A stretch of 64,000 nucleotides of DNA from contig NW_027270904.1 of the NCBI RefSeq assembly GCF_040938485.1, forward strand, positions 2,480,001-2,544,000. Reading direction: 5' to 3'. The first letter of the stretch is position 1. The number at the start of each line of letters is the position of its first letter. This DNA comes from Diadema antillarum. Lineage: Eukaryota. This document shows, in pieces, positions 20,701 through 53,573 of this stretch. The translations under genes and the position numbers were made by a program. Under the pieces are notes generated by a model, which did no database searches, was not told where the DNA came from, and was given only the letters and a program-made list of their open reading frames with translations.

Positions 20701-23700
20701 TTCAATTAATCCTTGTCTATTCATAGATTACTATGATGGTTCACTATTGTTGTATACTCTATTCAATTCACATTGTCTTGTTTACATTATTGTTTGTTAT
20801 AAAAGAAAGTGAAATGTATGTTGTCTGTCAAAAAATGAAAATAAATTTGAATCGAATTGAATTTGATAAATCAAAGTTTGCTGACTGCAGTCTTCAATAG
20901 ACTCCCATGACAATGTTTTTTTACCTGTATCACAGTTGATTCCTTGTCTTCCTGTGTCACAAGAACACCCAAAGGGATCAGGCAGGCAGAACTGAAAAGG
21001 ACTACAGGTGTCAGCTGGATCATTGTTATTGTATGTACATCTGAACTCACAGTTTGGTCCAAATCGATTTCCTCCATTGACTCTACAGACTAAAGAAGAA
21101 ACCAAAAGCACACCAATATACATGATATATTTCAAACACGTGTTTATAACTATTGATTGAATCAATGAAATACTGATTTAAAACAAAAATTTTCTGACTT
21201 GTGTATTCATAGACCATACATGCATTCCCTAAACTGAATCAAATATTTCCAGGAACATCCAATGCTGTTGGATCCAGTTTCCATATATTGCTTTTAGGGT
21301 ACCCGCCTACTATCTCTATCTCTACTAGCTCCAAAATTACTGACCTGCAGTAACATGCAGTAGAATCAATTGAGGAAACAAATTCTGACAACTGGCCGGT
21401 CAACGTTAGATCCCTTACCGTGAAAATAATTGTCATTACTTTGTCTAATTCTAACGAAATTATCATGGTTATTTTTCTTTATTTCATTCTTTCTGTCACA
21501 GCAAAAGTAAAACTAACCGTGAAATTTGCATCGCTTTAGAAAGATAGTTTGATTATTCATTAAGAAATGACCTGTATATCCCTTTGCGGCTACAATTTCT
21601 TCAAGATTACATACCTTCCGTGGAATATCAAGCATTTATTATGAAGAGCTTTATCACAAAACGAGCTAACTCCATTCCTGTTAAGTTGAGATATTTGTCA
21701 TTGAAGCTGCTAAAAAACACATAAAATGATAAGATAATAAAGAATATTTTTAATCATAATTTCTAGAATATTCCTTGTCATGTAACAAGTGAGGTATTAC
21801 TGGGAAGGTTTCATTTTGCTGATGATGGACTTACTTTGAAGTGTTTGAAAATGGCGCCTAGCTCATTTTGCAATAGAACTCTTCATATTTTCAATCAATC
21901 TTTATTAAGCGGAAAATTTCCTGATAAAATGAAAGTCGCTAGAGTTGTTCCTATATACAAAAAGGGTCCTAAAGAACATGTTAATAATTATCGCCCGATA
22001 TCTCTTTTAACTTCAATTTCAAAAATTTTGGAAAAGCTTGTTCATAAAAGAACTCTTAGATTTCTTATTAATTGTAATATTCTTTCGAATTTTCAGTTCG
22101 GTTTCAGAAAGCAACACAGCACAACCCACGCTTTATTGGCTTTTATTGATAAAGTGGCACGTGCTCTTGACGATGCTTCACACACCATCGGTGTTTTTAT
22201 TGATTTCTCGAAGGCTTTTGACACGATATTCTCCTTTATTACGGCATTCGCGGGACGGCTTTAGAATGGTTTAGAGATTATCTTACTGATAGAAAGCAGT
22301 ATGTTTATCTTAATGGTCATGAGTCCTCAATGAAATCAATTACATGTGGTGTCCCCCAGGGTTCCCTACTCGGCCCGCTACTATTCATCTTGTACATAAA
22401 TGACCTCCAAAATTCATCAGAGATTCTTTCTTTTATATGCTTTGCAGATGACACAAATTTATTTCTTTCATATCGTAATTCTAATACGCTTATTCATATG
22501 TTAAACAGCGAATTGAAACTTGTTCAATCCTGGATATATGCCAACAAGTTATCACTAAACATTGATAAAACATATTATATGCTGTTCAGTAACTCTTTGC
22601 AATTTATTCCTGGTCATGTCCAAATTAATGGCATTAATTTAACGAAGGTTGATAGTGTTAAGTTTCTAGGACTGTATATTGATAGCGATTTATCTTGGAA
22701 GTCTCACATCAACTTTTTAACCAAAGTTTTATCTAGGAATGCAGGAATTCTAAATAAACTGAAAGATTACTTCCCCACCAATATATTGCAAATTATATAC
22801 TCGACTATGATTTCCCCTTACCTCAACTACGGAATACTGGCATGGGGTAACACCAGTCTTTGCTTGACTCGCTCTTTCTCTTACAAAAGCGCGCTATTAA
22901 AATAATTAGTAAGACTGGGTATCTATCTCATACAGATGAATTTTTCCAGAAGAACACAATTTTGAAATTGTCAGATTTGTTTTATTACAATTTAGGGATA
23001 TTCATGTACAAATTATCCAAAAATGATCTTCCTGATATTTTTTTGCATATGTTTAAAAGAAATTACTCTATTCATAACTATCCCACCCGCCAACGTGACG
23101 ATTATCACCTACCACGTACCCGAACCATTTTTGCGAAAAAAACAATTATGTATACAGGGCCGAAGTACTGGAACGATCTCCCCATAGAACTCGCAGGTTG
23201 TTTGTCTTTGTCGACCTTCAAATACAAATTAAGACATAATTTATTGAATAATTACATTGCGTAAGTCCATTGAAATTTCCTTCTTTCTTGTTTATGTGCC
23301 TTTTCCTGCTGTGTTGGTTGTTGTTATTCAAATCAGTTAAGCCTCTCTGTTTGCGCTCTTAAAGGGGAAGGCTAGTAACTGATCAGTGGGAATCAGTGGA
23401 AATGCTGGGAGATGATTGTTCCAATCCTTATGGGATTCATTCAAGAGTTCATTGTATATCTATTGTTGTGTGAAAGTGATTTGCTTCAGAACGGTCTCAT
23501 ATTCAAGTAATGTGCAGATTAATGCTCCGTCACTGACCAGGGACGCTAACCTGGAAGCATTAAACGGCACATTACTTGAATATGAGACCATTCTGAAGCA
23601 AATCATTTTCACACAACAATAGATATACAATGAACTCTAGAATGAATCCCATAAGAATTGGAACAATCATCCCCCAGCATTTCCACTGATTCCCACTGAT

Positions 23701-26700
23701 CAGTTACTAGCCTTCCCCTTTAAATTCCTTCACACCAGTACCCCTTTTGGTACCCTAAGACCTCGGAACGCGTGAACAGCTGGCTTGTTGTATTCCCCTC
23801 AGTGCTATACTGGCTGGTAATTCTAATTAATTCCAAATTTTCTTTGAATGTTAGTACTTGTATGTTCACTCTTTAGGTTTCCCGTATCTCCTCCGAGGAC
23901 TCGCATGTCGAGTTGTTCTCTTTTCACCATTATTCAAATCATACTGCTACACTATTGTCAACATTGTTAAATCAACTGTTCTTACATCTGCAGAATGTGG
24001 TTGTCTGTATATCACTATTAATGTATTGAGAAGATTCTGTTAGTGCACCAGGTATTTTTGCCTTTCATTTTTGTTTCTCTTTATTTTGGTCCTACGTTGC
24101 ATCCGTGCTCCTCATCTTTACACTCTGTTCAGAATTTGGGACCTACGCTTAACAAGCTCGCTTTTAAGTAGGTTCCGTCATTTTTCTTTCGCGTTATACA
24201 TAGAACCAAACGTACGATGATTGACCACTATATGTTTTATATTCTTACATTAATTTACTGTACATCCAAGCCGGATCTACCGAACAAAAAATCCAGTGAC
24301 GGGGGTAAGCTACCTCTGAGTCTGTTAAAAGCCGTTTCTGAGTATGTCATTGCACCATTAGCCTTTATATTCAATTTGTCCTTTAAAACTGGTAAAATTC
24401 CGACTTCACTGAAATGTTCAAAAATCATCCCTATTCATAAAAAGGGGAAGAAGACAGATGTCAATAATTATCGACCAATCTCCATTCTGCCGACCACTGT
24501 GAAGATGCTTGAAAAGATTGTGTACAATCAGGTTTACTCCTATTTGCATTCAGTAGACGCCATTAACAAAAACCAGTCAGGTTTTCGCCCACAACATTCA
24601 ACAATGACCACGCTATTGAAGGTTACAGAAGACTGGCTCTCCTCTATGGATGATGATAGAATGACAGGAATGGTTAGTGTAGACTTAAGAAAAGCCTTTG
24701 ATACAGTGGACCACGCCATACTTGTAGACAAGCTGCGAATGATTGGCATGGCTCCCCATGCCTGTGAATGGTTTAAGGATTACCTCAGCAATCGCACACA
24801 ATATACTGAGGTGAATGGGTTTCAATCGAAATCACTTAGCGTAACATGTGGAGTCCCCCAAGGGTCCAATCTTGGCCCACTTTTGTTCACAATCTATATC
24901 AATGATTTGCCTAACTGCTTACAACGTTCATCGGTTGCATTATATGCTGACGATACGTGTATTTATGTGTCTGGTAAAAATGTAAAACAGATGGAAGAAA
25001 ATTTAAACCATGATATGGCCTGTATTGCAGATTGGCTTATATGTAACCGATTAGCCCTTAATTTGGAAAAATGTGAAACTATGTTAATAGGATCTAAAAA
25101 AAAAAAAAAGTTAAACATGTGAATTTGAATGTGATTGTAAATGACGTTAGAATAACTCAAGTTCCTTATTGTAAATATCTCGGTGTGTATATTGATCAGT
25201 CACTAGACTGGAGCCATCATATTGAACATTTGTGTAAACGCATTATCAGAGATTTGTATCTGTTAAAGAGAATAAGACATTTTATATCAGTTGAAACAGC
25301 TGTTACATTCTATAAATCCATCATTCAAAGTAACTTTGACTATTGTGATGTTATATGGTCAAATGTTAATCAGAGTTATATTCAGCGTCTTCAAATTCTT
25401 CAGAATCGTTCTCTAAGAGCAGTGTTGCAGGTGAATTCGAGATACCCAACTAATTTGTTATACTCACAAATTAATGTTGACACACTTGAGATGAGAAGGA
25501 AAAAACATATGTTGTGCACAATGTATAAAGTCGCTTATAATTTAACCCCTAAATACATAAGTGAAATGTTTGAGTTGAAAATTTTTGATTATGATTTAAG
25601 GAATACAACGCTGATATTCAAGTTACCATACATCAAAACCTGCTTTAGGCAAAGGAGTTTTAGTTATCAAGGTCCAAAATTATGGAATACATTGCCAACA
25701 TGCGTAAAACAGCAAACAATTTTTAGCGGTTATAGACGGAGTTTGAATTTGTATCTGACACCACAGTGATATTGTACCCATAACCCATCTTTTTTTTTTT
25801 CAAGTAAACCAAGCATGTATTCATTTTTTTTTTTAATGTAAACATTTTTTTCTTCTAATTTTGTTCTGATTTGTTTCGTCTAATTGTATTTTGTATATAT
25901 GTTTCATGTACATGTGTATATGTTTTGAAAAAAAAAAGTATGTCATTTTTACCTCATGATGCACGGACATGAGGAAGAACAGCCGTCTGGCTGAATCATG
26001 TGCCGTGTTGAAATAAATAAATGAAATGAAAATGAAATGAAATGATTCACTATGTTTTTATTATATTTGATGTACATTCCTTCATTGAGAAGTATGAAAA
26101 TAAATTGAAATTGAAATTGAAATTGAATATATTCATTCCATTCCATTTCAACTAGGTGTATACTATTTGTGAAGTGAGACACCTTCCTGATGATGTATAC
26201 TTACTCTCCAAACAGTTTGGTCCTCTGAAATTGTTTGGACATATACACCTGCCCGTCTCGTCATCACAAATTCCACCATTGTAGCAATTGTCACATATTC
26301 TGATGCAATAAGGTGGACCCCATTTACCAGCTGGACAATCTGCAAACAGAAAAAGAAATATGTATGTTGCATCTGATTGAGCTTTATGGTAGAAAACAAA
26401 ATAAGACAAAAATATACGGTATCCTTACTATCACAAAGGGTAATGAAGTTCATAATATCATGTACAACTCTTATCTAAGCAATGACCTTCACAACCTTCT
26501 GAGGGGCACAGGTCATTATTTGATATTTGAATGAATTTTCAAATGCAGTGATGTTAAATTCAACCCCAGCACAGCAGCGGACGTAGTCAAGAAAATTAAG
26601 ACATAAACTATGTGCACTCATAGTTTTCTGTTTTGTTGCTTGATATCAACTTTACATCATAACATATAGCTCCAGTGATTTACCTCGAACAATCAATTTG

Positions 26701-28875
26701 TACAAGGCTCCCCTTCCTTGACTTCGCATGCCACTGTAGTAAATCTCATAGATGCCTTCATCCTCAGCCACGATTGGATCAGAAAACATGAACGTGGTGT
26801 TTGTCTGTCCTGTCACGGGGTTTCCTCCATCTTTTCTCCAGACAGGGGTACCAGGAGAGCAAGCACCTGTATCTGTCATTTCGATCATCACTCCTGCGTC
26901 ACCTACATTGACCGTACGGGTGAATACCCCATCCACAGGCTCAAAGCAGGCTAAATGCACAAACATAATATAGTTTATAATACATCAATACAATATCATT
27001 AGATCTATCACACTAGTGTAATGAGGAATATTGTTTTCCTACCTGAGGCTAAATAAACAGAAATAGAGACTGTGTGTACTGCTAAAGTACTAATCATAGT
27101 GTTATTACTCTGTTAAGTCAAAATTCACATGCACATTCAAAAGAGATGTCGTCAGATGAAGGAGAAGGGAAGGTTTCAAATTTTAAAATGCTCTGAGAAT
27201 TTGAATTTCATGCAAAGCAAGACCCACGATCGTCATCAGGGCAAGCATTTTGTTGCCTTATCAATAAACAAGCCTCACTATTTATTTTTCAAAGTACGCG
27301 CATTTTCCGGTTCCATTACAGATTAGTATTTTATAACGTACAAATTCATTTTATTATGCCCAATAACATGTAAAATGTAAGAAATTTCTATGTAAGTTGC
27401 TAAACAGTTGCTAAGAATATTTTTTTCAAAATATTTTTAATCTTCAAGATTATGATCATAAAAACTCTGGCCTGAGGATTTTTTCTTTGTGTGTGTGTGT
27501 GTGTGTGTGTGTACGTATGTGTCATTTTGATAATTTTTACTGTAATAATCTTAGACAGTAAATTTCTGTTAGCTTTGTGAAAATTACACACGAAGCTCTT
27601 GACCACCTTTAGTATGAATACATGTATTCAAGATTGGACCACCTTATATACATGATCTACGAGGTAAGGCTAATGGAAATCATGTTTGTAGCATTATTGA
27701 TGACATTAATTGCAAAAGTGATCAGCACGTAGTTTAATCACTAGACTGGTTTTAGAAAGGTAACACTTTTCTTTTATGTTCACCCACTGATGCCCCAATA
27801 TTTGTAATTTTGTCTAAACTAATTCGTTTGCCCTAAATTTTCATTTTTCCTTCTTATCGATCTGAATAATGTGTTTCAAGGGCGAAATGGACCAGTTCAA
27901 CATGTTAAAGATTGTTAAATGAAAGAGAGAGGTAACTTCTTGGCTACTTCATCTGAAATCATAGTTATGAGCTCATCTTGCAATATACGGATTTTGATGA
28001 TTGCCGTCAGGGATTTATATTAGGAGTTTATAGTTTATCCTATGATTAAATGGAGGACAAAGTGGATGATTTGAAGACTGGTTAAACCTATCCATTAGCG
28101 GATCCAGAAATTCCTTGAAGACGGGGAGCATTTAAAAACTATAGGGGGCGCACGCACCACACCCCGGAAGTTTTTATCTATTTATTTTTTTGTTGTTGTT
28201 CTAAGCAAAACAAAACAACAAAACAAAACAAAACAAAACAAAAAGTGCCGGAGCGCCCGCTGCTCCCCCGCCTTGATCCGCCACTGTTACGATACGATAA
28301 TACATTTCCGTCTTTGCCCAGCAGCTGTTGATAGCATTTATTTTGTATGAAGTTCTTTCTTTTTATTATTGGTCGGCATAGGAAAAGGGATACCTGCAAA
28401 ACAGTTTCTAAGCTTAAATCTAATTGGCCGTTGTTATCATATAGTTGTCGTTATTCTCAACAAAGACTCCTCATCATGGAGTTAGATGTACCTGATGTAA
28501 GCTATTCTTACAAGTTTGATTGTGTATATTGTCATGGGAGTACAAGGCATTGTTTTGTTATCATACCGTCACTTCGTTTGAAGAATGATGATATCGTCTG
28601 GTCGTCAAAGCCTTCTTGTGAACCAAGGCAGTAAAATGCTCCGAATCCCTCCACATCCCACTCAGAAGTGGGTGGAAAAATTACACGTCTGCCACCATAA
28701 GCAAGATTGCTAGCTGAAGGTGGCTCAGGTGAAGTGTCACTGGGGATTGGTGCTGTCCTGCCAAAGTCACGGGAGGCTGATGAGGATGGAGAGCTTCGAA
28801 AGCAAAGCATCTGAGAAGTTGCACTCTCAATGTTTGAAAATCCAACTGAAATCACAGTGATGTGGACCCGCTCAC
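1..28875 (-). CDS. Spliced mosaic extracellular protein, partial at both ends: TIE-like Ig-Ig-EGFx5-Ig-FN3 (copy A) + PTS mucin + NIDO + AMOP + VWD, about 2,630 aa in window
   Basis: 19 exons join in one frame with canonical AG/GT sites: 28567-28875, 26684-26950, 26205-26339, 20925-21089, 20369-20518, 19028-19183, 18177-18308, 16787-17071, 16189-16497, 11359-15714, 9532-9680, 8971-9123, 6009-6152, 5172-5574, 4008-4217, 2990-3109, 2018-2226, 830-917, <1-149. Phases are compatible at every junction. Confidence 0.8.
830..917 (-). CDS. VWD-domain exon (VELLLNDERNAISILINGTQNVSDDAIIQ)
   Basis: AG/GT boundaries, 88 nt, phase 0 to 1; the VE.L...ING pattern expected in VWD. Confidence 0.75.
1217..1583. 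mobile_element. TTAA-flanked MITE (Kolobok-like), family 1
   Basis: ttaaagg...cctttaa ends; internal sequence recurs at 19351-19724 and 33142-33507. Confidence 0.7.
2018..2226 (-). CDS. VWD-domain first exon (FTWGDPHISTLDGNMYTFNGLGEY...)
   Basis: WGDPH..T.DG..YTFNG.GEY motif of MUC4/SUSD2/Mesh-type VWD; AG/GT boundaries. Confidence 0.9.
2990..3109 (-). CDS. AMOP C-terminal exon (DADILPLYYC...YDERRKPVTCNDYNPPLQ)
   Basis: Not in the ORF track; 120 nt, phase 1-1; Y..RR.P.TC..Y.PP motif preceding GDPH. Confidence 0.85.
4008..4217 (-). CDS. AMOP exon (DAEDETLCFQRWRG...GPGVRCYYDRST)
   Basis: 210 nt, phase 1-1, AG/GT; G..CxY motif. Confidence 0.8.
4727..5016. mobile_element. Small foldback-type element with about 17-bp subrepeats (GAAGGTTCGTTATTCC) in inverted arms
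   Basis: Left arm repeats ...ccgaaggttcgtt... and right arm repeats ...aacgaaccttcgg...; boundaries approximate. Confidence 0.65.
5172..5574 (-). CDS. NIDO end / AMOP start exon (VNTFQAIIGTNG...CMDWY...CPCSLLQAVFDWRF)
   Basis: NTFQ NIDO motif and C..WY...CPC...QA..D.RF AMOP motif; 403 nt, phase 0 to 1. Confidence 0.9.
6009..6152 (-). CDS. NIDO exon (EYVGNLSAVQQVLQ...KVTFVNFRPAVSASDDE)
   Basis: 144 nt, phase 0-0, AG/GT; splices directly to VNTFQ. Confidence 0.8.
7182..7829. mobile_element. TTAA-type MITE with long imperfect TIRs (Kolobok-like), family 2
   Basis: ttaaaggaaaccaaaacccaaagagcaat... versus ...attgttctttgggtttcggtttcctctaa; the inverted match extends about 100 bp. Confidence 0.7.
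7956..8048. repeat. (AT)n microsatellite
   Basis: Visible directly; similar tracts near 5015-5060, 8727-8790, 16080-16140 and 33665-33705. Confidence 0.95.
8971..9123 (-). CDS. NIDO exon (ITSSGALVFSN...QIYYK)
   Basis: 153 nt, phase 0-0; equivalent to the NIDO I..NG.ISF and V.Y segments. Confidence 0.8.
9532..9680 (-). CDS. NIDO first exon (GSFYLDYGPGEEDL...FSYVR)
   Basis: Not in the ORF track; 149 nt, phase 1 to 0, gtgagt donor; YG...D motif. Confidence 0.8.
9869..10974 (+). mobile_element. Solo LTR (Ty3/Gypsy-like), 1,106 bp
   Basis: TGTCAC...GTAACA ends, 4-bp TSD ATAC on both sides, TATATAA at 10314-20, AATAAA at 10904-09, no internal ORFs. Confidence 0.8.
11359..15714 (-). CDS. Giant mucin-like PTS exon, 1,452 codons of pentapeptide repeats (PTxEG / PTPER / PTTVG)
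   Basis: Stop-free 4,356 nt; acag acceptor at 15715-16 and gtaag donor at 11357-58; phase 1-1 joins FN3 to NIDO. Confidence 0.9.
16189..16497 (-). CDS. Copy A FN3 exon (TIE-type, ...VAAVREGPGGTGP)
   Basis: 309 nt, phase 1-1; W...Y...L.GL.P.TEY.V.V FN3 pattern. Confidence 0.9.
16787..17071 (-). CDS. Copy A Ig3 exon
   Basis: 285 nt, phase 1-1; FTC...GEYEC Ig cysteine pair. Confidence 0.85.
17125..17677. mobile_element. PIF/Harbinger-like MITE, present only in copy A
   Basis: TIR AG(C/G)(C/G)CTTTTTACACTTG and TTA TSD; empty site in B (about 31478) and C (about 41331). Confidence 0.75.
18177..18308 (-). CDS. Copy A EGF/laminin-EGF exon 5
   Basis: 132 nt, phase 1-1; ECQGAFYGLGCVESCPC...C. Confidence 0.85.
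19028..19183 (-). CDS. Copy A EGF exon 4
   Basis: 156 nt, phase 1-1; CDDGYYGTDCTDKCHC... Confidence 0.85.
19351..19724. mobile_element. TTAA-flanked MITE, family 1 (copy A)
   Basis: TTAA at both ends; absent at the homologous site in C (single TTAA near 42996). Confidence 0.75.
20369..20518 (-). CDS. Copy A EGF exon 3
   Basis: 150 nt, phase 1-1; DCSSGTYGAGCSQTCHCQSG... Confidence 0.85.
20925..21089 (-). CDS. Copy A EGF exon 2 (TIE signature FCLPDPFGCSC)
   Basis: 165 nt, phase 1-1; CLPDP[YF]GCSC is characteristic of TIE1/TEK EGF2. Confidence 0.9.
21889..23270 (+). mobile_element. 5'-truncated CR1/L2-like LINE RT fragment, frameshifted
   Basis: YRPISLL, KAFDT, GVPQGSLLGP and FADDT motifs across three ORFs; absent from the homologous intron of B. 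Confidence 0.9.
23359..23723. mobile_element. Complete TTAA-flanked MITE with about 155-bp TIRs, family 3
   Basis: ttaaaggggaaggctagtaactgatcagtggg...cccactgatcagttactagccttcccctttaa. Confidence 0.85.
24280..26045 (+). mobile_element. Second 5'-truncated CR1/L2-like LINE RT fragment with (AATGA)n-type tail
   Basis: YRPISIL, KAFDTVDH, GVPQGSNLGP and YADDT motifs; frameshift at the poly-A run near 25100. Confidence 0.9.
26205..26339 (-). CDS. Copy A EGF exon 1 (CPAGKWGPPYC...CYNGGICDDETGRCIC)
   Basis: 135 nt, phase 1-1; matches the TIE EGF1 pattern. Confidence 0.9.
26684..26950 (-). CDS. Copy A Ig2 exon (T.TVNVGD...WRKDG...DEGIY...LIVR)
   Basis: 267 nt, phase 1-1; TIE Ig2-like. Confidence 0.9.
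28093..28287. mobile_element. Short TIR element (GCGGATCCA...GATCCGC) with (AAAAC)n core, shared by all three copies
   Basis: Inverted ends; paralogs near 37836-38038 and 52776-52986, so it predates the duplications. No TSD identified. Confidence 0.5.
28567..28875 (-). CDS. Copy A Ig1 exon (TIE N-terminal Ig-like, GAFYC)
   Basis: 309 nt, phase 1-1, ccag acceptor and gtatg donor. Confidence 0.85.
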
Positions 28876-29550
28876 CTGGATATGGACAAATTACATACAT
28901 GAAGGAGGGTTTTAATCTCGGGGGGAAAAAAATCGAAAAACTACCGCTTAAATATTCACCCATGTTACACAGCATTTAGACAATACATCATAATATGTAC
29001 TGACCGCCTCAACATTTCTACATTGCTAAAATTGTCAAGTTAAATTCTGTCACTTCAAAACCTTCAAATCGTAAGAGCATGCCTACTGCTTCAGAGAAAT
29101 TAAGATTTATAATGATTATATGATTATTTCTTATTGAAAGCATTGAAACAGATGAAAAAAATGGTAACTCTAGGCAGAAACTTGTTCAGGTGATATGGCA
29201 TCACTCAGCCCCTAATAATAAGATATCATACAAATCATGTTTGGTCAATATCATTGAGGAACTAAAATCCTTTCAAGGTCATCATTACTCGATAATCACA
29301 GCATAACAAAAATACAAACTCTTTCTAAAAATTGTTTTATGTCAAACACAACATATCACTTTATCTAATTAACATAATCGTGTGCTTCATACTCATATCA
29401 TTGTTTTAATAGAAATACGCGAAATTTCTCAGTTTAATGATGTTCTTATTGTACGTCTGACTTATGTAATACTTGTGTATTTCTATTGGATTTGCTCTAT
29501 TTTTGAAAGGCTACCTATGGTGAGGCAGTGTACGACTCCCCGCAACATAA

Positions 29551-29710
29551 AGGGGATGGCTAGTAACTGATCAGTGGGAATCGGTGGAAATGCTGGGGGG
29601 GGGGGGGTGAATATTCCATTCTTGTGCATGGGATTCATTTGAGAGTACATTATACACTGTATATCTATTGTTGTGTGAAAATTATTTGCTTCAGAATGGT
29701 CTCATATTCA
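29551..29710. mobile_element. Single arm of MITE family 3 at the B/A junction
   Basis: Matches 23363-23515 and is joined directly to the truncated mucin exon. Confidence 0.8.
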
Positions 29711-30066
29711 TTATGTCGGTTCTTCTGCTGCTGGCCTTTCTGTTGTTTTACCCACTGTCGTTGGCCTTTCAGGAGTGGCTCCTTCAGTTGTCGGTTCTTC
29801 TGTTGTTGGCCTTTCAGGAGTTGGTCCTTCTGTTGTTGACCCTTCCACTGTTGGTCCTTCTGCTGTTGGCCTTTCCGGAGTTGGTCCTTCTGCTGTCGGC
29901 CCTTCCACTGTTGGTTCTTCTCTCGTTGGTCCTTCTGCTGTTGGCATTTCTGTTGTTGTACCCACTGTTGTTGGCCTTTCAGGAGTGGGTCCTTCTGCTG
30001 TCGGCCCTTCCATTGTCTGTCCTCTTGTTGGTCCTTCTGTTGTTGGCTTTTCTGTTGTTGACCCCC
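29711..30066 (-). CDS. Copy B short mucin exon, terminating ...PAAEEPT*
   Basis: Same acceptor as the giant exon; TAA at 29711-13 abuts a MITE arm. Confidence 0.7.
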
Positions 30067-33000
30067 CTGTTTTTAAAATCAATCCAAGTTTTACACTTTG
30101 AGGAGCTGTTACTCATAACATGTCAATGACACTTTGTTGGCTTTGATTTTCTATTCTTTTATACTTTGATATCTTCCTCATTATAACAAGTTATTGTAAA
30201 TGGTAATTTCGTCGGTCTTATGAAGGTTTAGTGCTACCCAAATATTTTGGAATGAAGTATAAAAGATAAATGCATTTCTGAATACATTAATTTTGTAGTA
30301 ATTTCTGAAATATGTCAAATGATATAGATAGAAATCATAAGTATGGCATCATTCTTGTTATCTCTGTATTTCTAAATTTGCCAACACGCAGCAGCTTATA
30401 CCAAATTATATATAGATATACATAGATACATAAATATGTATATTTATAATATACATATGTAATATATATATACATATATATATATATATACACATATATC
30501 TGAAGCAATAAATTGGCAAATCAAGATATTCCTGACCACATGATCTTACTTGCACTCATGGTCACTCCTGAGGATGAGTTAGACCTCGGTCCTGTTCCTC
30601 CTGGACCCTCCCTGACCGCTGCTACACTGACCTCGTATTCAGTGTCTGGATTCAGACCAGGCAATGTAGCAGATGTCGTTGAGGCAAATACCTTTGGTCC
30701 AGTAATCCATTTTTCATCAGGAAGCCTGTAATACGTGATGTATTCTGTGAGGGGTGGGTCTCCAACACCTGTCTGCTCACTCCAAGCCACCCACTCAATG
30801 GTAAGAGAGGTGGATGTTGATGCAGTAACTACTGGAGCAGCTTCAATTACAGGCAGAACTATGAAAGAAATATCGCAAAACAAGAAAGGGAATTACACAA
30901 AACACCGATTTCGACCCATATCGGACCAGATTGGGTGCTAGTGCGTGATCGTGCCCTGGACTGATATGGGCTGAGAACTACACATCCTACCATGCTCATG
31001 TACATGCACATTGTATAAAGGCTATCTCGTCTATACATAAATGCAACTTGTAAAAAGTTGCTACAGCTCTATCATAATATACAGAAATCCCGAAGTTCAT
31101 TAAAAACTTATCATACTGATATTTCAGAACATTCCTCTTACCGTATGTGACTGCAGAGACACTGAGGCTCGCCCGGTTTTTATATAGGGCACATACATAT
31201 TCTCCAGAAGTCACTCGATCAACTGAGAATACTACCAAACGCCTATCTCCAGACGCATTCAGAGAACTCTGATTTTGACTGATACCAGAGTAATTTGGCA
31301 CACCATCCGTGAGTTGGTAGAAACTGACATCTGTTACGTTAGCTGGTGGATCTCCTTCAACAACACAGGTGAATGATGAAGGCTGGTTTGGATTAACTCT
31401 GACATTCACATAGAGGGCGTAGATTCCTGAAAGGAAATAAAAGTGTTACATTCACATGACAGCTACTCCTACTCTCTTGGTACATCAATTTTAAACACAT
31501 TTTCTTCATATTTTTGTGCCAACTGTTTCATTTCGACAGTAATCTGAGAACATTTACACGTTTCCATACAATATAATACGTGAGGAAATTTTTACAGCGA
31601 CATTTTAGAACACTCATGCGATTCTGCAACATGAATAATAATAATAATGACAATGATAGTTGCAAATATCATGCTACTACTGCACTACTTCTACTTATAC
31701 TATTAATAATGAGAATAGTAACAACAATGGTTATGTGAGACACTAAAACAATGATTTGGTCCTATTACCCACGGAGGCCTATTTAGTGTCGTCATTGCTG
31801 CACTAGATGGCGCAACCATATCTGACTATGCTGATATTTCCAGGAACCTTGTTGAGATACCTGCTTCAAGACAGACGAAGAACATGCTCAAGAATGACTA
31901 CACTAGGATGGATTCGAAAGCTCCACAATGGTGGTCTAATTAAAACTACTTCAAGTGTTGCACTCCCTACATTACCTTCTTGGCAGTCTCTCTCCACCCA
32001 GTTTGGTAGACACTGTCCTCTACAGATTCCCGACACTTTGTCACAAGTGCTTTCATCACAGGGGCATGGCTCCACACACCCAAGGCCATAGAACGCTCCT
32101 TGGCATTCTGTTAGATTATGCAGGGAAATAAAGACTGATCAACTAGTGTCAATTACTTGCATAAAATTATCACAGCTAAAGAAAGAAACGTTGTACCGTG
32201 AGTAAATTTCCAAACAGTGATGGATTGACTACTCTTCCTATTTGAAAATAAGTCTCGCACATATCAAATGCATACCTGTGTCCAGTGTCACTTTATTCAC
32301 TCATTATATTTTAATATCTTTCTTACGGTTTTCGTATAAAGCCGTGACAATGAAGAGATCAGTTACATGGCCGTCATAAGTAATGTGCAAAGGGGAAAAA
32401 TAAGATCAAAACAAGACAACTGCTTAAAAAGTAGAATCGACTAAATTCAGCTTATTTACTTCTTCCCCAGAGGATATGCGTATCAAATTTATGGTGGGAA
32501 GAAGCAAGGTATTAAATATGTAAAAAACTGACAAAAGAAGATTTTCATCGCAAAATGGGCTTATTGCTATTTTTAGGCAAATCCATCGTCAAATAGAGCG
32601 AAAAAAACTTCTGCAGTGATAAATTCATAAAGTTAGAGTAAGGGATATCCCGTATTTTCTTTTAAATCTCGTTGTTTTCTGCAGATTTGATCGCAAAAAT
32701 CTCAACTTAACGAAAATTGAGTTAGGTCGTTGTACGATGAAACTCTTGAAATGTATTTAAAAATGGATCACGTGACTAGAGAGAGTTACATGAACTAAGA
32801 CAATTTAGTATACTATTACCCTGACAGTGAACGTCATCATCATAGATGTTGAAATAGAGGGCGCACCGCTGATTCGGACACTCTCCTGTTATCTTGTCAC
32901 ATGGTGCGTCATCCAAACAATGACATTTATCTGTACAGTCAGTTCCGTAGTAGCCGTCATCACACGTGTCTGAGACTGGAAAATGTATGAACAAATAGGG

Positions 33001-36000
33001 CATAGAATATCAATTTTATATTTTGTGTTACTTGTCTTTCTTTCTTTTGGGGGTAAAGAATCTGGCAAAATCACCTATTGAGCAAGTTATGTTGTCAAAA
33101 GATAGCTGAATAACTCATGAAATGTACGACCGTTCCTGTACTTAAAGGTCCTGCTTACCCTTGTGAGCAGTGGAAAAATTCATGATATCACATTTGATGC
33201 ATATGTGTAGGTCCGTTGTATCAGAAAACATCCTACCATATAAAATATTTGCAATAAAGCATAAAATATAAGGAGATATCAGTGTTTTTTTCTCATTAAA
33301 CCGTAAATGTAGATGGTTTGGTCTTGAAACATTTTTATTATAACTATTGTTCACAATATTTATCTAACAGTAATCAATATCGATTATACGGATTCAAATT
33401 TCAACAGTGGTTGTTTCTAGCCATAACTTACATTTCAGATTCATTTTAAAGCATCAATGCTGGGTTTTTGTTTCTTCTGCATATGGTAAATAATTATTAT
33501 GCCTTAAAGCGTTGAAGAAAATAGTGACGTGATTCTTTATGATCTGATGATCTTTGGACATGAACAGAGATATGGTACATGTATTTCACATCATTTTTTT
33601 CATTTCCGCCAAAATTTCGATGTTTCCTGTAAAGCTGATTTCCCATGGTGAAAAATAGGAACGATATATACATATATTTGTACATATATATATATATATA
33701 TATGTATAGCCTCATCCAGAGGGCCTTTAATATCAATTTCTACTTCTTAATATCCATTCATGTGGTTTTGATTATATTTGATCTTTAAGGTTCAGTAAAA
33801 AAAATTCACTCTGCAGGACACCAAAACTTTTAGTAGCGATCATTCATTAGTTCCTATAAAAAGTTCATTTTTTATTGAATATATATTTTTTATCAAATAA
33901 ACATTAAAGACAACTATCAGAGTGGAAATACGGCCAAACACATCACTTTCTACGTAGGTTGATATTGTTGCAACTTTCATGGAGCGGTAGTTGATTTCTC
34001 TATTTATTCTTATGAGTTGTTTTTTTTAACGTATTTAGTTTACTTGTTTATTTCTGTCAACATGGATGTAATATAGCATGGTTGAAAAAATACTTTACTA
34101 TTATTTTTTATTTTTCATTTTTCATTTTATTCTATCTAAACTGTATATATATTGATGACACTGGAAATGAAGGAAGGGGAGGTTTCAATACTCACTTTGA
34201 CAATTTTCCCCGGACCAGGTTGTCTGACAGTCTGTTATAGGTGTTCCCGAAGAGGCTACACAGACTCCAGAATATCTGTTACATAGCCCAGACTGACAGT
34301 GACATGTTTGACTGCACCCAGCTCCATACGTTCCGCTGCTACAATCTTTGTAAAGTAAGAGGAAAAGAGGTGAACAACAACAACAACAAAGTCCTAAAAG
34401 TTCTCAAATAAAAAAAATCATTATTATATGGGATCTTCTGTATCTTTCGAGTTGATTGTAACCTTTTTATTTTGAAATATGTCACATGAGAAATGGCTCG
34501 ATATCAGTAATTGAATTGTGTTATCAAATTCAATTAATCCTTGTCTATTCATAGATTACTATGATGGTTCACTATCGTTGTATACTCTATTCAATTCACA
34601 TTGTCTTGTTTACATTATTGTTTGTTATAAAAGAAAGTGAAATGTATGTTGTCTGTCAAAAAATGAAAATAAATTTGAATCGAATTGAATTTGATAAATC
34701 AAAGTTTGCTGACTGCAGTCTTCAATAGACTCACATGACAATGTTTTTTTACCTGTATCACAGTTGATTCCTTGTCTTCCTGTGTCACAAGAACACCCAA
34801 AGGGATCAGACAGGCAGAACTGAAAAGGACTACAGGTGTCAGCTGGATCATTGTTATTGTATGTACATCTGAACTCACAGTTTGGTCCAAATCGATTTCC
34901 TCCATTGACTCTACAGACTAAAGAAGAAACCAAAAGCACACCAATATACATGATATATTTCAAACACGTGTTTATAACTATTGATTGAATCAATGAAATA
35001 CTGATTTAAAACAAAAATTTTCTGACTTGTGTATTCATAGACCATACATGCATTCCCTAAACTGAATCAAATATTTCCAGGAACATCCAATGCTGTTGGA
35101 TCCAGTTTACATATATTGCTTTTAGGGTACCCGCCTACTATCTCTATCTCTACTAGCTCCAAAATTACTGAAGTGCAGTAACATGCAGTAGAATCAATTC
35201 ATTGAGGAAACAAATTCTGACAACTGGCCGGTCAACGTTAGATCCCTTACCGTGAAAATGACTGTCATTACTTTGTCTAATTCTAACGAAATTATCATGG
35301 TTATTTTTCTTTATTTCATTCTTTCTGTCACAGCAAAAGTAAAACTAACCGTTAAATTTGCATCGCTTTAGAAAGACAGTTTGATTATTAATTAAGAAAT
35401 GACCTGTATATCCCTTTACGGCTACAGTTTCTTCAAGATTACATACCTTCCGTGCAATATCAAGCATTTATTTTGAAGAGCTTTATCATAAAACGAGCTA
35501 ACTCCATTCCTGTTAAGTTGAGATATTTGTCATTGAAGCTGCTAAAAAACACATAAAATGATAAGATAATAAAGAATATTTTTAATCATAATTTCTAGAA
35601 TATTCCTTGTCACGTAACAAGTGAGGTATTACAGGGAAGGTTTCATTTTGCTGATGATGGACTTACTTTGAAGTGTTTGAAAATGGCGCCTAGCTCATTT
35701 TGCAGTAGAACTCTTCATATATATATATATATATATATATACATTTCATTTCAACTAGGTGTATATTATTTGCGAGGTGAGACACCTCCCTGATGCTGTA
35801 TACCTACTCTCCAAACAGTTTGGTCCTCTAAAATTATTTGGACATATACACCTGCCAGTCTCATCATCACAAACTCCACCATTGTAGCATTTGTCACATA
35901 TTCTGATGCAGTAAGGTGGACCCCATCTACCAGCTGGACAATCTACAAACATAAAAAGAAATATGTATATTGCATCCGATTGAATTTTATGGTAGAAAAC

Positions 36001-38631
36001 AAAATAAGACACAAAATATACGGTATCCCTACTATATCACGAAGGGTAATGAAGTTCATAACATACCACGTACAACTCTTATCTAAGCAATGACCTTCAA
36101 AACCTTCTGAGGGGCACAGGTTATCATTTGATATTTGAATGAATGTTCAAATGCAGTGATGTTAAATTCAACCCATGCACAGCAGCGGACGTAGTTAAGA
36201 AAATTAAGATATAAACTTTGTGCACTTATAGCTTTCTGTTTTGTTGCTTGATATCAACTCTACATCATAACATCTATAGCTCTTGCTCCAGTGACTTACC
36301 TCGAACAATCAATTTGTACAAGGCTCCCCTTCCTTGACTTCGCATGCCACTGTAGTAAATCTCATAGATGCCTTCATCCTCAGCCACGATTGGATCAGAA
36401 AACATGAACGTGGTGTTTGTCTGTCCTGTCACGGGGTCTCCTCCATCTTTTCTCCACACAGGGGTACCAGGAGAGCAAGCACCTGTATCTGTCATTTCGA
36501 TCATCACTCCTGCGTCACCTACATTGACCGTACGGGTGAATACCCCATCCACAGGCTCAAAGCAGGCTAAATGCACAAACATAATATAGTTTATAATACA
36601 TCAATACAATATCATTAGATCTATCACACTAGTGTAATGAGGAATATTGTTTTCCTACCTGAGGCTAAATAAACAGAAATACAGACTGTGTGTACTGCTG
36701 AAGTACTGATCATAATGTTATTTCACTGTTAAGTCAAAATTCACATGCACATTCAAATCAGATGTCATCAGATGTAGGAGAAGGGAAGGTTTCAAATTCT
36801 AAAATGCTCTGAGAATTTGAATTTCATGCAAAGCAAGACCCACGATCGTCATCAGGGCAGGCACTTTGTTGTCTTATCAATAAAAAAGCCTCACTATCTA
36901 TTTTTCAAAATAAGCGCATTTTCCGATTCCACTACAGATGAGTATTTTATAACGTACAAATTAATTTTATTATCACTTTCTATTGTTATGCCCAATAACA
37001 TGTAAAATGTAAGGAACTTCTATGTAAGTTGCTAAGTAGTTGCTAAGAATATTTTTTTTCACCATATTTCTAATCTTCAAGATTATGATCATAAAAACTC
37101 TGGCCTGAAGATTTGTGTGTGTGTGTGTGTGTGTGCGTGTGTGTGTGCATGTGTCATTTTGATCATTTTTACTGTAATAATCTTAGACAGTAAATTCCTG
37201 TTAAGCTTTGTGAAAATAACAGACGAAGCTTTTGACCACCTTAAGTATGAATACATGTATTCAAGATTGGACCATCTACATAGTCTACGAGGTAAGGCTA
37301 ATGGAAATCATTTTTGTAGCATTATTGATGACCATAATTGTAAAAGTGACCAGCATGTGAGTCTAATCACTAGAGTGGTTTCAAAAGGTAACACTTTTCT
37401 TTTATGTTCGCCCACTGATGCCCCAATATTTGTAATTTTGTCTAAACTAATTCGTTTGCCTCAAATTTTCCTTTTTCTTTCTTAAATTCTTCGATCTGAA
37501 TGATGTGTTTTAAGGGCGAAATGGACCAGTTCAACATGTTAAAGATTGTTAAATGAAAGAGAGAGGTAACTTCCCATAAACACACAAAATGTACTTCACA
37601 ATGTATTTGATGTATTTGATGGAACAAGTGATACATTAGCTATATAGATAACGGGCAGGAGTGTTGGCTACTTCATCTGAAATCATAGTTATAAGCTAAT
37701 CTTGCAATATACGGATTTTGATGGTTGCCGTCAGGGATTTATATTAGGAGTTTATAGTTTATCCTATGATTAAATGGAGGACAAAGTGGATGATTTGAAG
37801 ACTAGTTGCCAACCTACCTAAACCTATGAAATCCATTTGCGGATCCAGAAATTCCTTAAAGACGGGAGCATTTAAAAACTATAGGGGGCTCACGCACCAC
37901 ACCCCGGAAAGTTTTTATTTATTTTTTCTTGTTTTGTTTTAAGCAAAAAAACAACAACAAACAAACAAACAAACAAACAAACAAAACAAAACAAAAAACG
38001 CCGGAGCGCCTGCTGCTCCCCGCCTTGATCCGCCACTGTTACGATACGATAATACATTTCCGTCTTTGCCCAGCAGCTGTTGATAGCATTTATTTTGTAT
38101 GAAGTTCTTTCTTTTTATTATTGGTCGGCATAGGAAAAGGGATACCTGCAAAACAGTTTCTAAGCTTAAATCTAATTGGCCGTTGTTATCATATAGCTGT
38201 CGTTATTCTCAACAAAGACTCCTCATCATGGAGTTAGAAGTACCTGATGTAAGCTATATATTCTTACAAGTTTGATTGTGTATATTGTCATGTGAGTACA
38301 AGGCATTGTTTTGTTATCATACCGTCACTTCGTTTGAAGAATGATGATATCGTCTGGTCGTCAAAGCCTTCTTGTGAACCAAGGCAGTAAAATGCTCCGA
38401 ATCCCTCCACTTCCCAGTCAGAAGTGGGTAGAAATTGTATGCGTCTGACATTTGTAAAAGAGATGACTGCTGAAGGTGGTTCAGGTGAAGTGTCACTGGG
38501 GATTGGTGCTGTCCTGCCAAAGTCACGGGAGGCGGCTGAGGATGGAGAGCTTCGAAAGCAGAGCATCTGAGAAGTTGCACTCTCAATGTTTGAAAATCCA
38601 ACTGAAAGCACAGTGATGTGGACCCGCTCAC
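29711..38631 (-). CDS. Copy B: TIE-like Ig-Ig-EGFx5-Ig-FN3 cassette + short mucin exon ending in TAA
   Basis: Exons 38323-38631, 36300-36566, 35808-35942, 34753-34917, 34196-34345, 32820-32975, 31976-32107, 31142-31426, 30550-30858, 29711-30066. Frames and splice sites are intact and the nine cassette exon lengths equal copy A. Confidence 0.8.
33142..33507. mobile_element. TTAA-flanked MITE, family 1 (copy B)
   Basis: Same intronic position as 19351-19724. Confidence 0.75.
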
Positions 38632-52300: not shown

Positions 52301-53573
52301 GTGACCAGCATGTGAGTCTAATCACTAGAGTGGTTTCAAAAGGTAACACTTTTCTTTTATGTTCGCCCACTGATGCCCCAATATTTGTAATTTTGTCTAA
52401 ACTAATTCGTTTGCCCCAAATTTTCCTCTTTCTTTCTTAAATTCTTCGATCTGAATGATGTGTTTTAAGGGCGAAATGGACCAGTTCAACATGTTAAAGA
52501 TTGTTAAATGAAAGAGAGAGGTAACTTCCCATAAATACACAAAATGTACTTCACAATGTATTTGATGTATTTGATGGAACAAGTGATATATTAGCTATAT
52601 AGATAACGGGCTTGGCTACTTCATCTGAAATCATAGTTATAAGCTAATCTTGCAATATACGGATTTTGATGATTGCCGTCAGGGATTTATATTAGGAGTG
52701 TATCATACCGTATGATTAAATGGAGGACTAAGTGGATGATTTGAAGACTAGTTGCCAACCTACCTAAACCTATCCATTGGCGGATCCAGAAATTCCTTAA
52801 AGACGGGAGCATTCAAAAACTATAGGGGGCTCACGCACCACACCCCGGAAAGTTTTTATTTATTTTTTCTTGTTTTGTTTCAAGCAAAAAACAAAAACAA
52901 AAAACAAAAACAAAACAAAACAAACAAACAAAACAAAACAAAAACGCCGGAGCGCCTGCTGCTTCCCCGCCTTGATCCGCCACAGTTACGATACGATAAT
53001 ACATTTCCGTCTTTGCCCAGCAGCTGTTGATAGCATTTATTTTGTATGATGTTCTTTCTTTTTATTATTGGTCGGCATAGGAAAAGGGATACCTGCAAAA
53101 CAGTTTCTAAGCTTAAATCTAATTGGCCGTTGTTATCATATAGTTGTCGTTATTCTCAACAAAGACTCCTCATCATGGAGTTAGAAGTACCTGATGTAAG
53201 CTATTCTTACAAGTTTGATTGTGTATATTGTCATGTGAGTACAAGGCATTGTTTTGTTTTATACCGTCACTTCGTTTGAAGAATGATGATATCGTCTGGT
53301 CGTCAAAGCCTTCTTGTGAACCAAGGCAGTAAAATGCTCCGAATCCCTCCACATCCCATTCTGCAGTGGATGGAAAATGTACACGTCTGATATCTCGAGT
53401 ATAGTCGCGAGCTGCAGGTGGCTCAGGTGAGGTGTCACTGGGGATTGGTGCTGTCCTGCCAAAGTCACGGGAGGCTGATGAGGATGGAGAGCTTCGAAAG
53501 CAGAGCATCTGAGAAGTTGCACTCTCAATGTTTGAAAATCCAACTGAAAGCACAGTGATGTGGACCCGCTCAC
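39454..53573 (-). CDS. Copy C: TIE-like Ig-Ig-EGFx5-Ig-FN3 cassette + short mucin exon ending in TAA
   Basis: Exons 53265-53573, 51253-51519, 47689-47823, 47215-47376 (162 nt), 46659-46811 (153 nt), 42682-42837, 41832-41963, 40996-41280, 40404-40712, 39454-39914. All are in frame and the only indels are whole codons. Confidence 0.8.
43088..45110 (+). mobile_element. 3' fragment of an RNase-H-bearing non-LTR retrotransposon (I/Nimb-like)
   Basis: WGAD....LLYRSLVRPHLDY; RNase H motifs IYTDGS...EL.AI...FSDSLS...WVPAH.G..GNE.AD; C-terminal CxxC..ETVEH.L..C knuckle; boundaries approximate. Confidence 0.85.
45840..45982. repeat. Minisatellite, about 6 copies of ATGAGCTCCCTCGTGGAGAC
   Basis: Visible tandem units of 22-28 bp. 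Confidence 0.85.
48136..51206. mobile_element. Foldback-type TIR element, 3,071 bp, non-coding
   Basis: TGTATCACCCCTAAATG...CATTTAGGGGTGATACA ends; flanks AATAT/GATAT versus the empty site GATAT in A and B; arms about 1.3 kb, loop about 430 bp. Confidence 0.9.

What the first reader, a model, noticed from the sequence alone, without database searches (positions are those of the whole stretch)
28691..53409. Seven-codon hypervariable segment in Ig1 of three otherwise near-identical cassettes
In the 103-codon Ig1 exon, the roughly 80 residues outside a 23-codon window differ at only 1-2 positions among copies. Inside it, seven consecutive codons differ in all three copies with no indel: A 28691-28711 SNLAYGG, B 38447-38467 VISFTNV, C 53389-53409 RDYTRDI. 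Nearby positions vary too (I/Q/H, P/L, P/S, E/D), while flanking introns stay close. Such focal amino-acid divergence at the membrane-distal Ig domain resembles a CDR-like recognition loop of immune, allorecognition or gamete-recognition receptors. That function is inference.
Basis: partly seen in the sequence, partly recalled or inferred. Interest (0 to 1): 0.88.

Follow-up and report, generated by a model that had tools for sequence, protein, structure and literature searches.

The report
Hypervariable loop in triplicated urchin Ig domain
Three tandem, nearly identical copies of a Tie-receptor-like protein head in a sea-urchin mucin gene differ completely at one seven-residue loop of their first Ig domain, and the codon pattern shows that selection for amino-acid change made the difference, as in known recognition proteins.

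Summary
On the minus strand, three 309-nt Ig1 exons (28567-28875, 38323-38631, 53265-53573) encode SNLAYGG / VISFTNV / RDYTRDI at the stated coordinates. Outside a 21-codon tract they differ at two residues.

- **Not chance:** the core has 11-14 substitutions in 21 nt, against a 3-5% background (P about 1e-11 to 1e-14). It is the only non-microsatellite substitution cluster in 2,541 aligned columns.
- **Not neutral:** all 14 first and second codon positions vary, but only 2 of 7 third positions do (Fisher p=0.001). Core omega is far above 1 (LRT p=3e-4), against 0.18 in the rest of the exon.
- **An old tract:** its synonymous divergence (0.23-0.28) matches that to homologues in Diadema, another urchin genus. 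The rest of the exon shows 0.03-0.05. It looks like an old island that escaped homogenisation.
- **Structure and family:** the domain folds like Tie2 Ig1. The patch ends the long connection before strand E. This stretch is the most variable and indel-rich across 20 sea-urchin homologues.
- **Setting:** each exon heads an intact 541-aa Ig-Ig-EGFx3-Ig-FN3 cassette, upstream of a mucin/NIDO/VWD tail.

Ligand, expression, allelic variation and whether the cassettes share one transcript remain untested. Two first-reader notes of this scan (s1-208698, s1-208730) already cover this same DNA.

The parts
28691..28711 (-). Hypervariable core, cassette A (codons 55-61 of Ig1, SNLAYGG)
38447..38467 (-). 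Hypervariable core, cassette B (VISFTNV)
53389..53409 (-). Hypervariable core, cassette C (RDYTRDI)
28655..28717 (-). 63-nt divergent tract (codons 53-73), cassette A. The equivalent tracts are B 38411-38473 and C 53353-53415.
   Evidence: 15 of 21 codons vary; pS 0.23-0.28 against 0.03-0.05 in the rest of the exon
28567..28875 (-). Ig1 exon of cassette A (309 nt, phase 1-1), Tie2-Ig1-like fold
38323..38631 (-). Ig1 exon of cassette B
53265..53573 (-). Ig1 exon of cassette C
16189..28875 (-). Cassette A: Ig1, Ig2 26684-26950, EGF1 26205-26339, EGF2 20925-21089, EGF3 19028-19183, Ig3 16787-17071, FN3 16189-16497. Intact 541-aa reading frame.
30550..38631 (-). Cassette B: Ig1, Ig2 36300-36566, EGF1 35808-35942, EGF2 34753-34917, EGF3 32820-32975, Ig3 31142-31426, FN3 30550-30858. 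Intact, 541 aa.
40404..53573 (-). Cassette C: Ig1, Ig2 51253-51519, EGF1 47689-47823, EGF2 47215-47376, EGF3 42682-42837, Ig3 40996-41280, FN3 40404-40712. Intact, 540 aa.
39495..39953 (-). Pro/Thr-rich linker exon after cassette C (phase-1 acceptor and donor candidates)
29752..30105 (-). Pro/Thr-rich linker exon after cassette B. The ORF stops 39 nt after the candidate donor.
11359..15753 (-). Giant Pro/Thr-rich mucin exon after cassette A (15-bp period, about 1,470 aa)
1994..5583 (-). Tail modules: NIDO/AMOP ORF 4936-5583 and VWD ORF 1994-2326

Best explanation
The three segments are the same seven residues, plus about 14 flanking codons, of the first Ig-like domain of three tandem paralogous 'Tie-like head' cassettes in a sea-urchin gene. 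They end a long irregular connection between beta-strands C and E. Each cassette is Ig1-Ig2-EGFx3-Ig3-FN3 followed by a mucin linker, and the last one runs into a giant mucin array and NIDO/AMOP/VWD modules.

Recent duplication or gene conversion keeps the cassettes almost identical. A 63-nt tract has escaped that homogenisation. Its seven-codon core has been driven apart by selection for amino-acid replacement.

The result is three germline-encoded heads that are alike except for one loop with very different chemistry: small and neutral in A, hydrophobic in B, charged in C. Most likely each head has its own binding specificity.

Shown here: the sequence pattern, its statistics, the codon-position asymmetry, the fold, and the family-wide variability of the loop. 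Inferred: that the loop binds something, what it binds, and that the three heads are expressed, whether in one chain or separately.
For: - **Substitution cluster:** it is far above background and unique in the alignment.
- **Codon positions:** 14/14 first and second positions vary against 2/7 third positions (Fisher p=0.001). Core pN is 0.65-0.77 against pS 0.10-0.34.
- **Codon likelihood model on the three copies:** core omega is far above 1 (LRT 12.9, p=3e-4), tract omega is 2.3, and the rest of the exon 0.18.
- **Same bias across genera:** with two Diadema homologues added, mean pairwise difference is 0.70 at positions 1-2 and 0.36 at position 3.
- **Functional copies:** all three cassettes are intact, with dN/dS 0.1-0.5 elsewhere. 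Eight of the nine amino-acid columns where all three differ lie in the tract.
- **Fold:** the AF2 model of Ig1 has pLDDT 83. The patch lies just before strand E, and the best structural match is Tie2 Ig1 at Z 9.9.
- **Family pattern:** in 20 homologues the stretch is the highest-entropy and most indel-rich part, 7-20 residues long. S. purpuratus-type paralogues are 40% identical there against 81% elsewhere.
- **Old tract:** tract pS among the cassettes (0.23-0.28) equals rest-of-exon pS to the Diadema genes (0.22-0.31), against 0.03-0.05 for the rest among cassettes. Tract states are shared in mosaic fashion with D. antillarum.
Against: - There are only three sequences and seven codons, and the core was picked because its amino acids differ. 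That choice inflates omega. It cannot explain the low third-position divergence.
- Over the whole 21-codon tract omega is not significantly above 1 (p=0.10).
- There are no allele data. The contigs of the public DNA runs break on both sides of the tract.
- Solvent exposure was not computed, because only secondary structure and confidence were returned. The multi-domain model failed (pLDDT 47).
- Expression evidence is weak: exon-only depth in one run of a related organism, and no splice junction.
- In vertebrate Tie2 the ligand binds Ig2, not Ig1 (recalled knowledge). Ig2 here is 98-99% conserved between cassettes.
Confidence: 0.62

Rival explanations
1. Patchwork gene conversion from diverged family members elsewhere in the genome. 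Each tract was copied in from another Tie-like gene, for example the receptor-phosphatase-type paralogues. The diversification then happened in the wider family, and the cassettes merely sample it. This is not exclusive of selection.
For: - Synonymous divergence in the tract is 5-8 times that of the rest of the exon and equals inter-genus divergence.
- The tract has sharp edges.
- Codon states are shared in mosaic fashion with the D. antillarum gene: ATA CAA with B, CCA TCC with C.
- The family sits on other chassis, such as receptor phosphatases in Diadema and S. purpuratus.
Against: No donor copy lies in the 64-kb window; there are exactly three Ig1 exons. The rest of the genome could not be searched. 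The third-position conservation still requires selection on amino acids somewhere in the family.
Confidence: 0.18
2. Neutral drift of an unconstrained floppy loop. The tract simply lies between gene-conversion tracts and accumulates any change.
For: The loop varies in length and sequence across the family. Tract-wide omega (2.3) is not significantly above 1. Synonymous divergence is raised too.
Against: - First and second positions are saturated while third positions are mostly conserved, which neutrality does not predict.
- Core omega is far above 1.
- There is no indel among the three copies, although the family tolerates them.
- The patch is modelled with high confidence (pLDDT blocks 89 and 87), so it is not predicted to be disordered.
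Confidence: 0.08
3. Alternative-cassette choice. The three heads are not concatenated. They are used one at a time, by exon skipping or by separate promoters, as in Dscam, sDscam or clustered protocadherins, so that cells or tissues display different heads.
For: - Every exon is phase 1-1, so any cassette can be skipped in frame.
- The linker ORFs of B and C end in a stop 39 nt after the candidate donor, so separate products are conceivable.
- sDscam variable Ig1 domains are among the structural neighbours.
Against: No leader exon or promoter was found before Ig1 of A or B. The spacer is only about 880 nt and partly a high-copy repeat. No junction reads were obtained in either direction.
Confidence: 0.08
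4. Artefact or somatic process. Either alleles were mis-assembled in tandem, or the sequenced tissue carried somatic hypermutation.
For: None directly. Contigs of independent runs break around the tract, which any branching in an assembly graph would also cause.
Against: - The cassettes have different intron content: a retrotransposon in A and a roughly 3-kb satellite palindrome in C. Their linker lengths differ, and EGF2 of C is strongly diverged.
- Exon depth is about four times intron depth in two independent DNA runs, as expected for multiple copies.
- Codon-aware change is not what hypermutation alone produces.
Confidence: 0.04

Closest known systems
Vertebrate Tie2/TEK (and sea-urchin SpTie1/2) ectodomain
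   Same: Same domain order, Ig-Ig-EGFx3-Ig-FN3. The Ig1 model superposes best on Tie2 Ig1, residues 23-121, with Z 9.9 and rmsd 2.9 A. The only Pfam hit of Ig1 is Ig_Tie2_1. Homologues are annotated 'Tie-1-like'.
   Different: - The tail holds no kinase, only mucin, NIDO/AMOP and VWD.
- There is one FN3 rather than three.
- The Pfam hit is below threshold (E=0.15).
- The head is triplicated.
- Tie2 binds angiopoietin through Ig2 and has no hypervariable Ig1 loop (recalled knowledge).
Abalone VERL and sea-urchin EBR1 egg receptors (recalled from the literature, not checked here)
   Same: These are giant glycoproteins built of tandem repeat units. The units are homogenised by concerted evolution, while particular parts evolve under positive selection. 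The taxa are broadcast spawners.
   Different: Their folds differ (ZP-N, or TSP1/CUB). In VERL whole repeats escape homogenisation, not a seven-codon patch. No evidence ties this gene to gametes.
MHC peptide-binding-region codons and KIR/LILR-type paralogous receptors
   Same: dN exceeds dS in a few contact codons. Synonymous divergence is raised next to them. Motifs are shared across species and shuffled by short gene-conversion tracts.
   Different: Those are allelic systems with population data. Here the variants are tandem paralogous cassettes, and alleles are unknown.
Dscam1 / chelicerate sDscam variable Ig exon arrays
   Same: Tandem arrays of Ig-coding units that differ in specificity-determining surface segments. 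sDscam Ig1 domains are structural neighbours at Z 8.0-8.4.
   Different: In those arrays the choice is made by mutually exclusive splicing or alternative promoters, and whole half-domains or domains differ. Here only about 21 codons differ in a 541-aa multi-exon cassette, and the mode of use is unknown.
HV4 (the D-E loop) of T-cell receptor V domains
   Same: The topological position is the same, directly before strand E and on the same end as the BC and FG loops. This is inferred from Ig topology and the secondary structure.
   Different: The domain is not V-set and there is no rearrangement. The BC and FG loops are identical among the three cassettes.
MUC4 / SUSD2 NIDO-AMOP-VWD module
   Same: A mucin array is followed by NIDO, AMOP and VWD.
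   Different: The N-terminal Tie-like heads are not part of MUC4 or SUSD2. The NIDO and AMOP hits are below the Pfam cut-offs.

Membership tests
Immunoglobulin-like domain | Two-sheet beta-sandwich with a conserved B-F cysteine pair | tested here: met
   The AF2 model (pLDDT 83) has six strands. All top fold matches are Ig domains. C24 and C82 are (nearly) invariant in 23 sequences.
Immunoglobulin-like domain | Sequence match to a curated Ig profile above threshold | tested here: not met
   The only hit is Ig_Tie2_1, at E=0.15 and 12.8 bits against a cut-off of 25. There is no sequence hit in the PDB.
Tie receptor ectodomain | Domain order Ig1-Ig2-EGFx3-Ig3-FN3 | tested here: met
   ORFs, Pfam hits and in-frame phase 1-1 exons support it, and the junctions match RefSeq homologues.
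Tie receptor ectodomain | Ig1 fold closest to Tie2 Ig1 | tested here: met
   2gy5 residues 23-121 match at Z 9.9 and rank first; the next hit has Z 8.6. TM-score is 0.67.
Tie receptor tyrosine kinase | Transmembrane segment and cytoplasmic tyrosine kinase | tested here: not met
   Downstream of the cassettes lie a mucin array, NIDO/AMOP and VWD. No kinase ORF is in the window. Homologues carry phosphatase domains instead.
MUC4/SUSD2-like | NIDO, AMOP and VWD in that order after a mucin array | tested here: inconclusive
   VWD scores 25.0 bits against a cut-off of 22.9. NIDO scores 22.8 against 25. AMOP reaches only E=0.16. The order is correct.
Positively selected recognition loop | Non-synonymous rate above synonymous rate at the variable codons | tested here: met
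   Core pN is 0.65-0.77 against pS 0.10-0.34. Variable positions are 14/14 against 2/7. The LRT for omega=1 gives p=3e-4. Caveat: three sequences, and codons chosen after the fact.
Positively selected recognition loop | Solvent-exposed position on the folded domain | tested here: inconclusive
   The patch lies in a non-regular connection that tolerates 7-20-residue length variation.
Positively selected recognition loop | Variation among alleles or individuals, and a demonstrated ligand contact | not testable with these tools
   Contigs of the public runs break around the tract. No binding data exist.
Dscam-type alternative exon array | Mutually exclusive use of the tandem units in transcripts | tested here: inconclusive
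   No splice joints were recovered. The exon phases allow both concatenation and skipping.
Diversity-generating retroelement (considered because the variable codons are mostly NNY) | An invariant template repeat near a dedicated reverse transcriptase, with adenine-specific changes | tested here: not met
   The window holds only three copies of the exon and no template copy. The reverse transcriptases present are ordinary non-LTR retrotransposons inside introns. No local repeats or hairpins flank the patch.

The most novel reading that the evidence does not exclude
The tract is the specificity determinant of a self/non-self or mate-recognition system that has not been described in sea urchins. 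Ancient loop lineages would be kept by balancing or diversifying selection and shuffled by short conversion tracts across species. They would be displayed as three differently tipped Tie-like heads on one mucin stalk, or chosen one at a time per cell.
Probability: 0.15. Interest if true: 0.85.

Novelty: new variant of a known kind. Interest (0 to 1): 0.6.

Why it matters
Sea urchins are a reference system for innate immune diversification (185/333, expanded TLR, NLR and SRCR families) and for the evolution of gamete recognition.

This Tie-like head family looks lineage-restricted. Only 23 representatives scored among 1.84 billion proteins, and every one that a source names comes from a sea urchin. 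Its loop shows one of the sharpest signatures of focal diversification one can see without population data. I found no paper that describes it.

If the loop sets binding specificity, the locus offers three natural variants on an otherwise identical scaffold, ready for binding and loop-swap experiments. It would also be a clean case of selection holding a 63-nt island against concerted evolution.

Tried and rejected
- **Word-indexed protein search** with the 147-aa ORF around Ig1, hoping for allelic fragments: no hit.
- **Protein Atlas:** no meaningful neighbour.
- **PDB sequence search:** nothing significant.
- **Multi-domain AF2 model** of the D. setosum head: pLDDT 47, unusable, so contacts of the loop with Ig2 or the EGF domains could not be assessed.
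- **Read laying on 26100-30200** with two DNA runs and two RNA-candidate runs: contigs end at 28640 and 28770 on either side of the tract, so nothing was learned about alleles. No splice joints appeared.
- **Leader-peptide search** with homologue leaders: no match in the window.
- **S. purpuratus and second Diadema loci,** fetched to replicate the pattern at DNA level: each holds a single Ig1 exon, so only protein-level replication was possible.
- **Local hairpins or repeats** as a mutational cause: none.
- **Replacement by unrelated sequence:** rejected, because 5 of 7 third positions are invariant in all three copies.
- **DGR-like templated mutagenesis:** rejected, because there is no template copy.
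- **Other 'hot' windows** in the alignment are microsatellites.
Full report
**What is there**

The feature lies on the minus strand. The three stated intervals translate to SNLAYGG, VISFTNV and RDYTRDI. They are codons 55-61 of a 309-nt exon with phase-1 boundaries, present at 28567-28875 (A), 38323-38631 (B) and 53265-53573 (C). RefSeq models of homologues use the same acceptor and donor. D. antillarum has ...RVAS|ERVHITV and D. setosum has ...KRSD|ACFEP.

Outside codons 53-73 the three exons differ at two residues. Inside, 15 of 21 codons differ, without any indel.

**Is it more than chance?**

I aligned about 2.6 kb around each exon, which gave 2,541 ungapped columns. Pairwise substitution rates outside the tract are 3.3-5.0%. 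The 21-nt core carries 14, 12 and 11 substitutions (binomial P 1e-14 to 1e-11). It is the top window for every pair. The only other windows that stand out are a (TTTTG)n and an (AC)n microsatellite, where the alignment slips. No hairpin or local repeat flanks the patch.

**Neutral or selected?**

- In the seven codons all 14 first and second positions vary among the three copies, but only 2 of 7 third positions do (Fisher p=0.001). B and C differ at 11 of 14 first and second positions and at 0 of 7 third positions.
- This rules out replacement by unrelated sequence. It also rules out a neutral tract with equally high synonymous change.
- Nei-Gojobori estimates for the core are pN 0.65-0.77 against pS 0.10-0.34. 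The rest of the exon has dN/dS 0.1-0.2.
- I ran a codon likelihood model on the three-taxon tree. Core omega is far above 1 (LRT against omega=1: 12.9, p=3e-4). The 21-codon tract gives omega 2.3 (p=0.10). The remaining 81 codons give 0.18.
- Caveat: the core was chosen because its amino acids differ, which inflates omega. That choice does not explain why the third positions stayed put.

**An old island**

Synonymous divergence in the tract (pS 0.23-0.28) is 5-8 times that of the rest of the exon among the cassettes (0.03-0.05). It equals the rest-of-exon divergence to homologous genes of Diadema antillarum and D. setosum (0.22-0.31). In the core, the three cassettes are as different from each other (52-67% of nucleotides) as from the Diadema genes (43-71%). 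Outside the tract they differ by 1.2-2.1%, against 10-13% to the Diadema genes.

Tract states are shared in mosaic fashion with D. antillarum: ATA CAA with B, CCA TCC and GCA GCT with C, GAG..GAT with A. EGF2 of cassette C also kept an old divergence (dS 0.42) while A and B are 99% identical there.

The simplest reading is concerted evolution of the cassettes, with a short island that conversion has not erased, or into which diverged sequence was copied. Numbers of synonymous sites are small (about 15), so this part is suggestive only.

**The gene**

Each Ig1 exon heads a cassette of seven phase 1-1 exons: Ig1, Ig2, three EGF-like, Ig3 and FN3. All three cassettes are intact (541, 541 and 540 aa) and evolve under purifying selection elsewhere. 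Eight of the nine amino-acid columns where all three copies differ lie in the tract.

Each cassette is followed by a Pro/Thr-rich exon. The last of these is a 15-bp-period array coding about 1,470 residues, followed by NIDO/AMOP and VWD ORFs. Phase-1 donors exist in the short linker exons of B and C, so one continuous reading frame through all three heads is possible. Those linker ORFs also end in a stop 39 nt further on, so three separate products cannot be excluded.

No leader exon was found in the window. Read evidence is thin. One run of a related organism covers only the Ig1, Ig2 and EGF1 exons, which looks like RNA, but no splice joint was recovered.

**Fold and family**

An AF2 model of Ig1 built on 23 aligned sequences has pLDDT 83. 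Its strands are at residues 5-10, 21-26, 34-39, 62-65, 79-85 and 92-97. The patch closes the long 40-61 connection and abuts strand E.

Ig topology places this D/DE position on the same end of the domain as the N-terminus and the BC and FG loops. That is an inference; I could not compute accessibility. The best structural match is Tie2 Ig1 (2gy5 residues 23-121, Z 9.9, rmsd 2.9 A). The only Pfam hit is Ig_Tie2_1, below threshold.

An exhaustive HMMER scan of 1.84 billion representative proteins gave 23 hits. I looked up sources for eight of them. Six are named, all from sea urchins (Diadema, Strongylocentrotus), annotated as uncharacterised, 'Tie-1-like' or 'receptor-type tyrosine-protein phosphatase T-like'.

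Across 20 of these homologues the stretch is the highest-entropy and most indel-rich part of the domain, 7-20 residues long. S. purpuratus-type paralogues are 40% identical there and 81% elsewhere. This includes two adjacent Ig1 domains of one protein. The two Diadema loci I fetched hold a single cassette and no NIDO or VWD, so the triplication on a mucin chassis is particular to this gene.

**Interpretation**

The most likely account is a germline-encoded specificity loop. It is held apart by diversifying selection on a scaffold that is otherwise homogenised. The outcome is three heads with a small-neutral, a hydrophobic and a charged loop.

Short-tract conversion from other family members may supply the variants. 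I cannot separate that from in-place divergence without the whole genome. Neutral drift of a floppy loop is disfavoured by the codon-position pattern. Assembly artefact is disfavoured by the different intron contents of the cassettes and by the depth of the exons in independent runs. What the loop binds is unknown; microbes, gametes, self and matrix are all open.

**Comparison and novelty**

The architecture and the Ig1 fold are Tie-like, but the gene is not a Tie kinase. The evolutionary behaviour resembles MHC contact codons and the abalone VERL or urchin EBR1 repeat receptors (recalled knowledge). The layout recalls Dscam or sDscam arrays, without evidence for exclusive use.

Full-text searches found only the SpTie1/2 orthologue paper cited in reviews. 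Nothing covered an expanded Tie-like head family or its variable loop. Two notes of this scan on the same stretch describe the triplicated cassette and the Tie/MUC4 fusion, and my independent reconstruction agrees with them. I rate this a new variant of a known kind: paralogous loop diversification under selection, in an undescribed echinoid receptor family.

Noticed in passing
window 29548-29710: An extremely high-copy repeat, with summed word depth about 3-4 x 10^5 in two DNA runs and in the RNA-like run. It sits in the spacer between the linker exon of cassette B and Ig1 of cassette A and starts right at the stop of the linker ORF.
   Followed up: no
window 48132-51211: Two blocks of a roughly 40-bp tandem repeat in inverted orientation (a satellite palindrome, 81-87% identity) fill the intron between Ig2 and EGF1 of cassette C only.
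   Followed up: no
window 21836-25769 (+) and 55557-58803 (-): Non-LTR retrotransposon reverse-transcriptase ORFs. One set is broken and lies inside an intron of cassette A. The other has an 874-aa ORF and lies upstream of cassette C.
   Followed up: no
window 47215-47376: EGF2 of cassette C is strongly diverged from A and B (87% nt identity, dS 0.42, one codon shorter), while A and B are 99% identical. Homogenisation is therefore mosaic along the cassette.
   Followed up: partly
L001 19461-19766 (D. antillarum) and window codon 62-63 of Ig1: The RefSeq model P0003 uses an in-frame cryptic donor (AGAC|GTATA) directly after the hypervariable patch and skips strands E-G of Ig1. The matching GT is present in cassettes A and C but not in B. 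It may be an annotation artefact.
   Followed up: no
window 29752 and 39495: The candidate donors of the short linker exons (CAGTGG|gtaaaaca) differ by one base from a motif (CAGTGGgtacaaca) that also occurs inside the short linker exons themselves. A cryptic donor may therefore have been recruited after the tandem duplication cut the array.
   Followed up: partly
window 11292-15749 (+): The antisense strand of the giant mucin array is also open for 1,485 codons (GPS/V-rich). This is probably just a consequence of the 15-bp periodicity.
   Followed up: no
cassette residue 426 (Ig3; A 16787-17071, B 31142-31426, C 40996-41280): The only amino-acid column outside the Ig1 tract where all three cassettes differ (G/K/E). 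Ig3 has the next-highest dN/dS, at 0.5.
   Followed up: no
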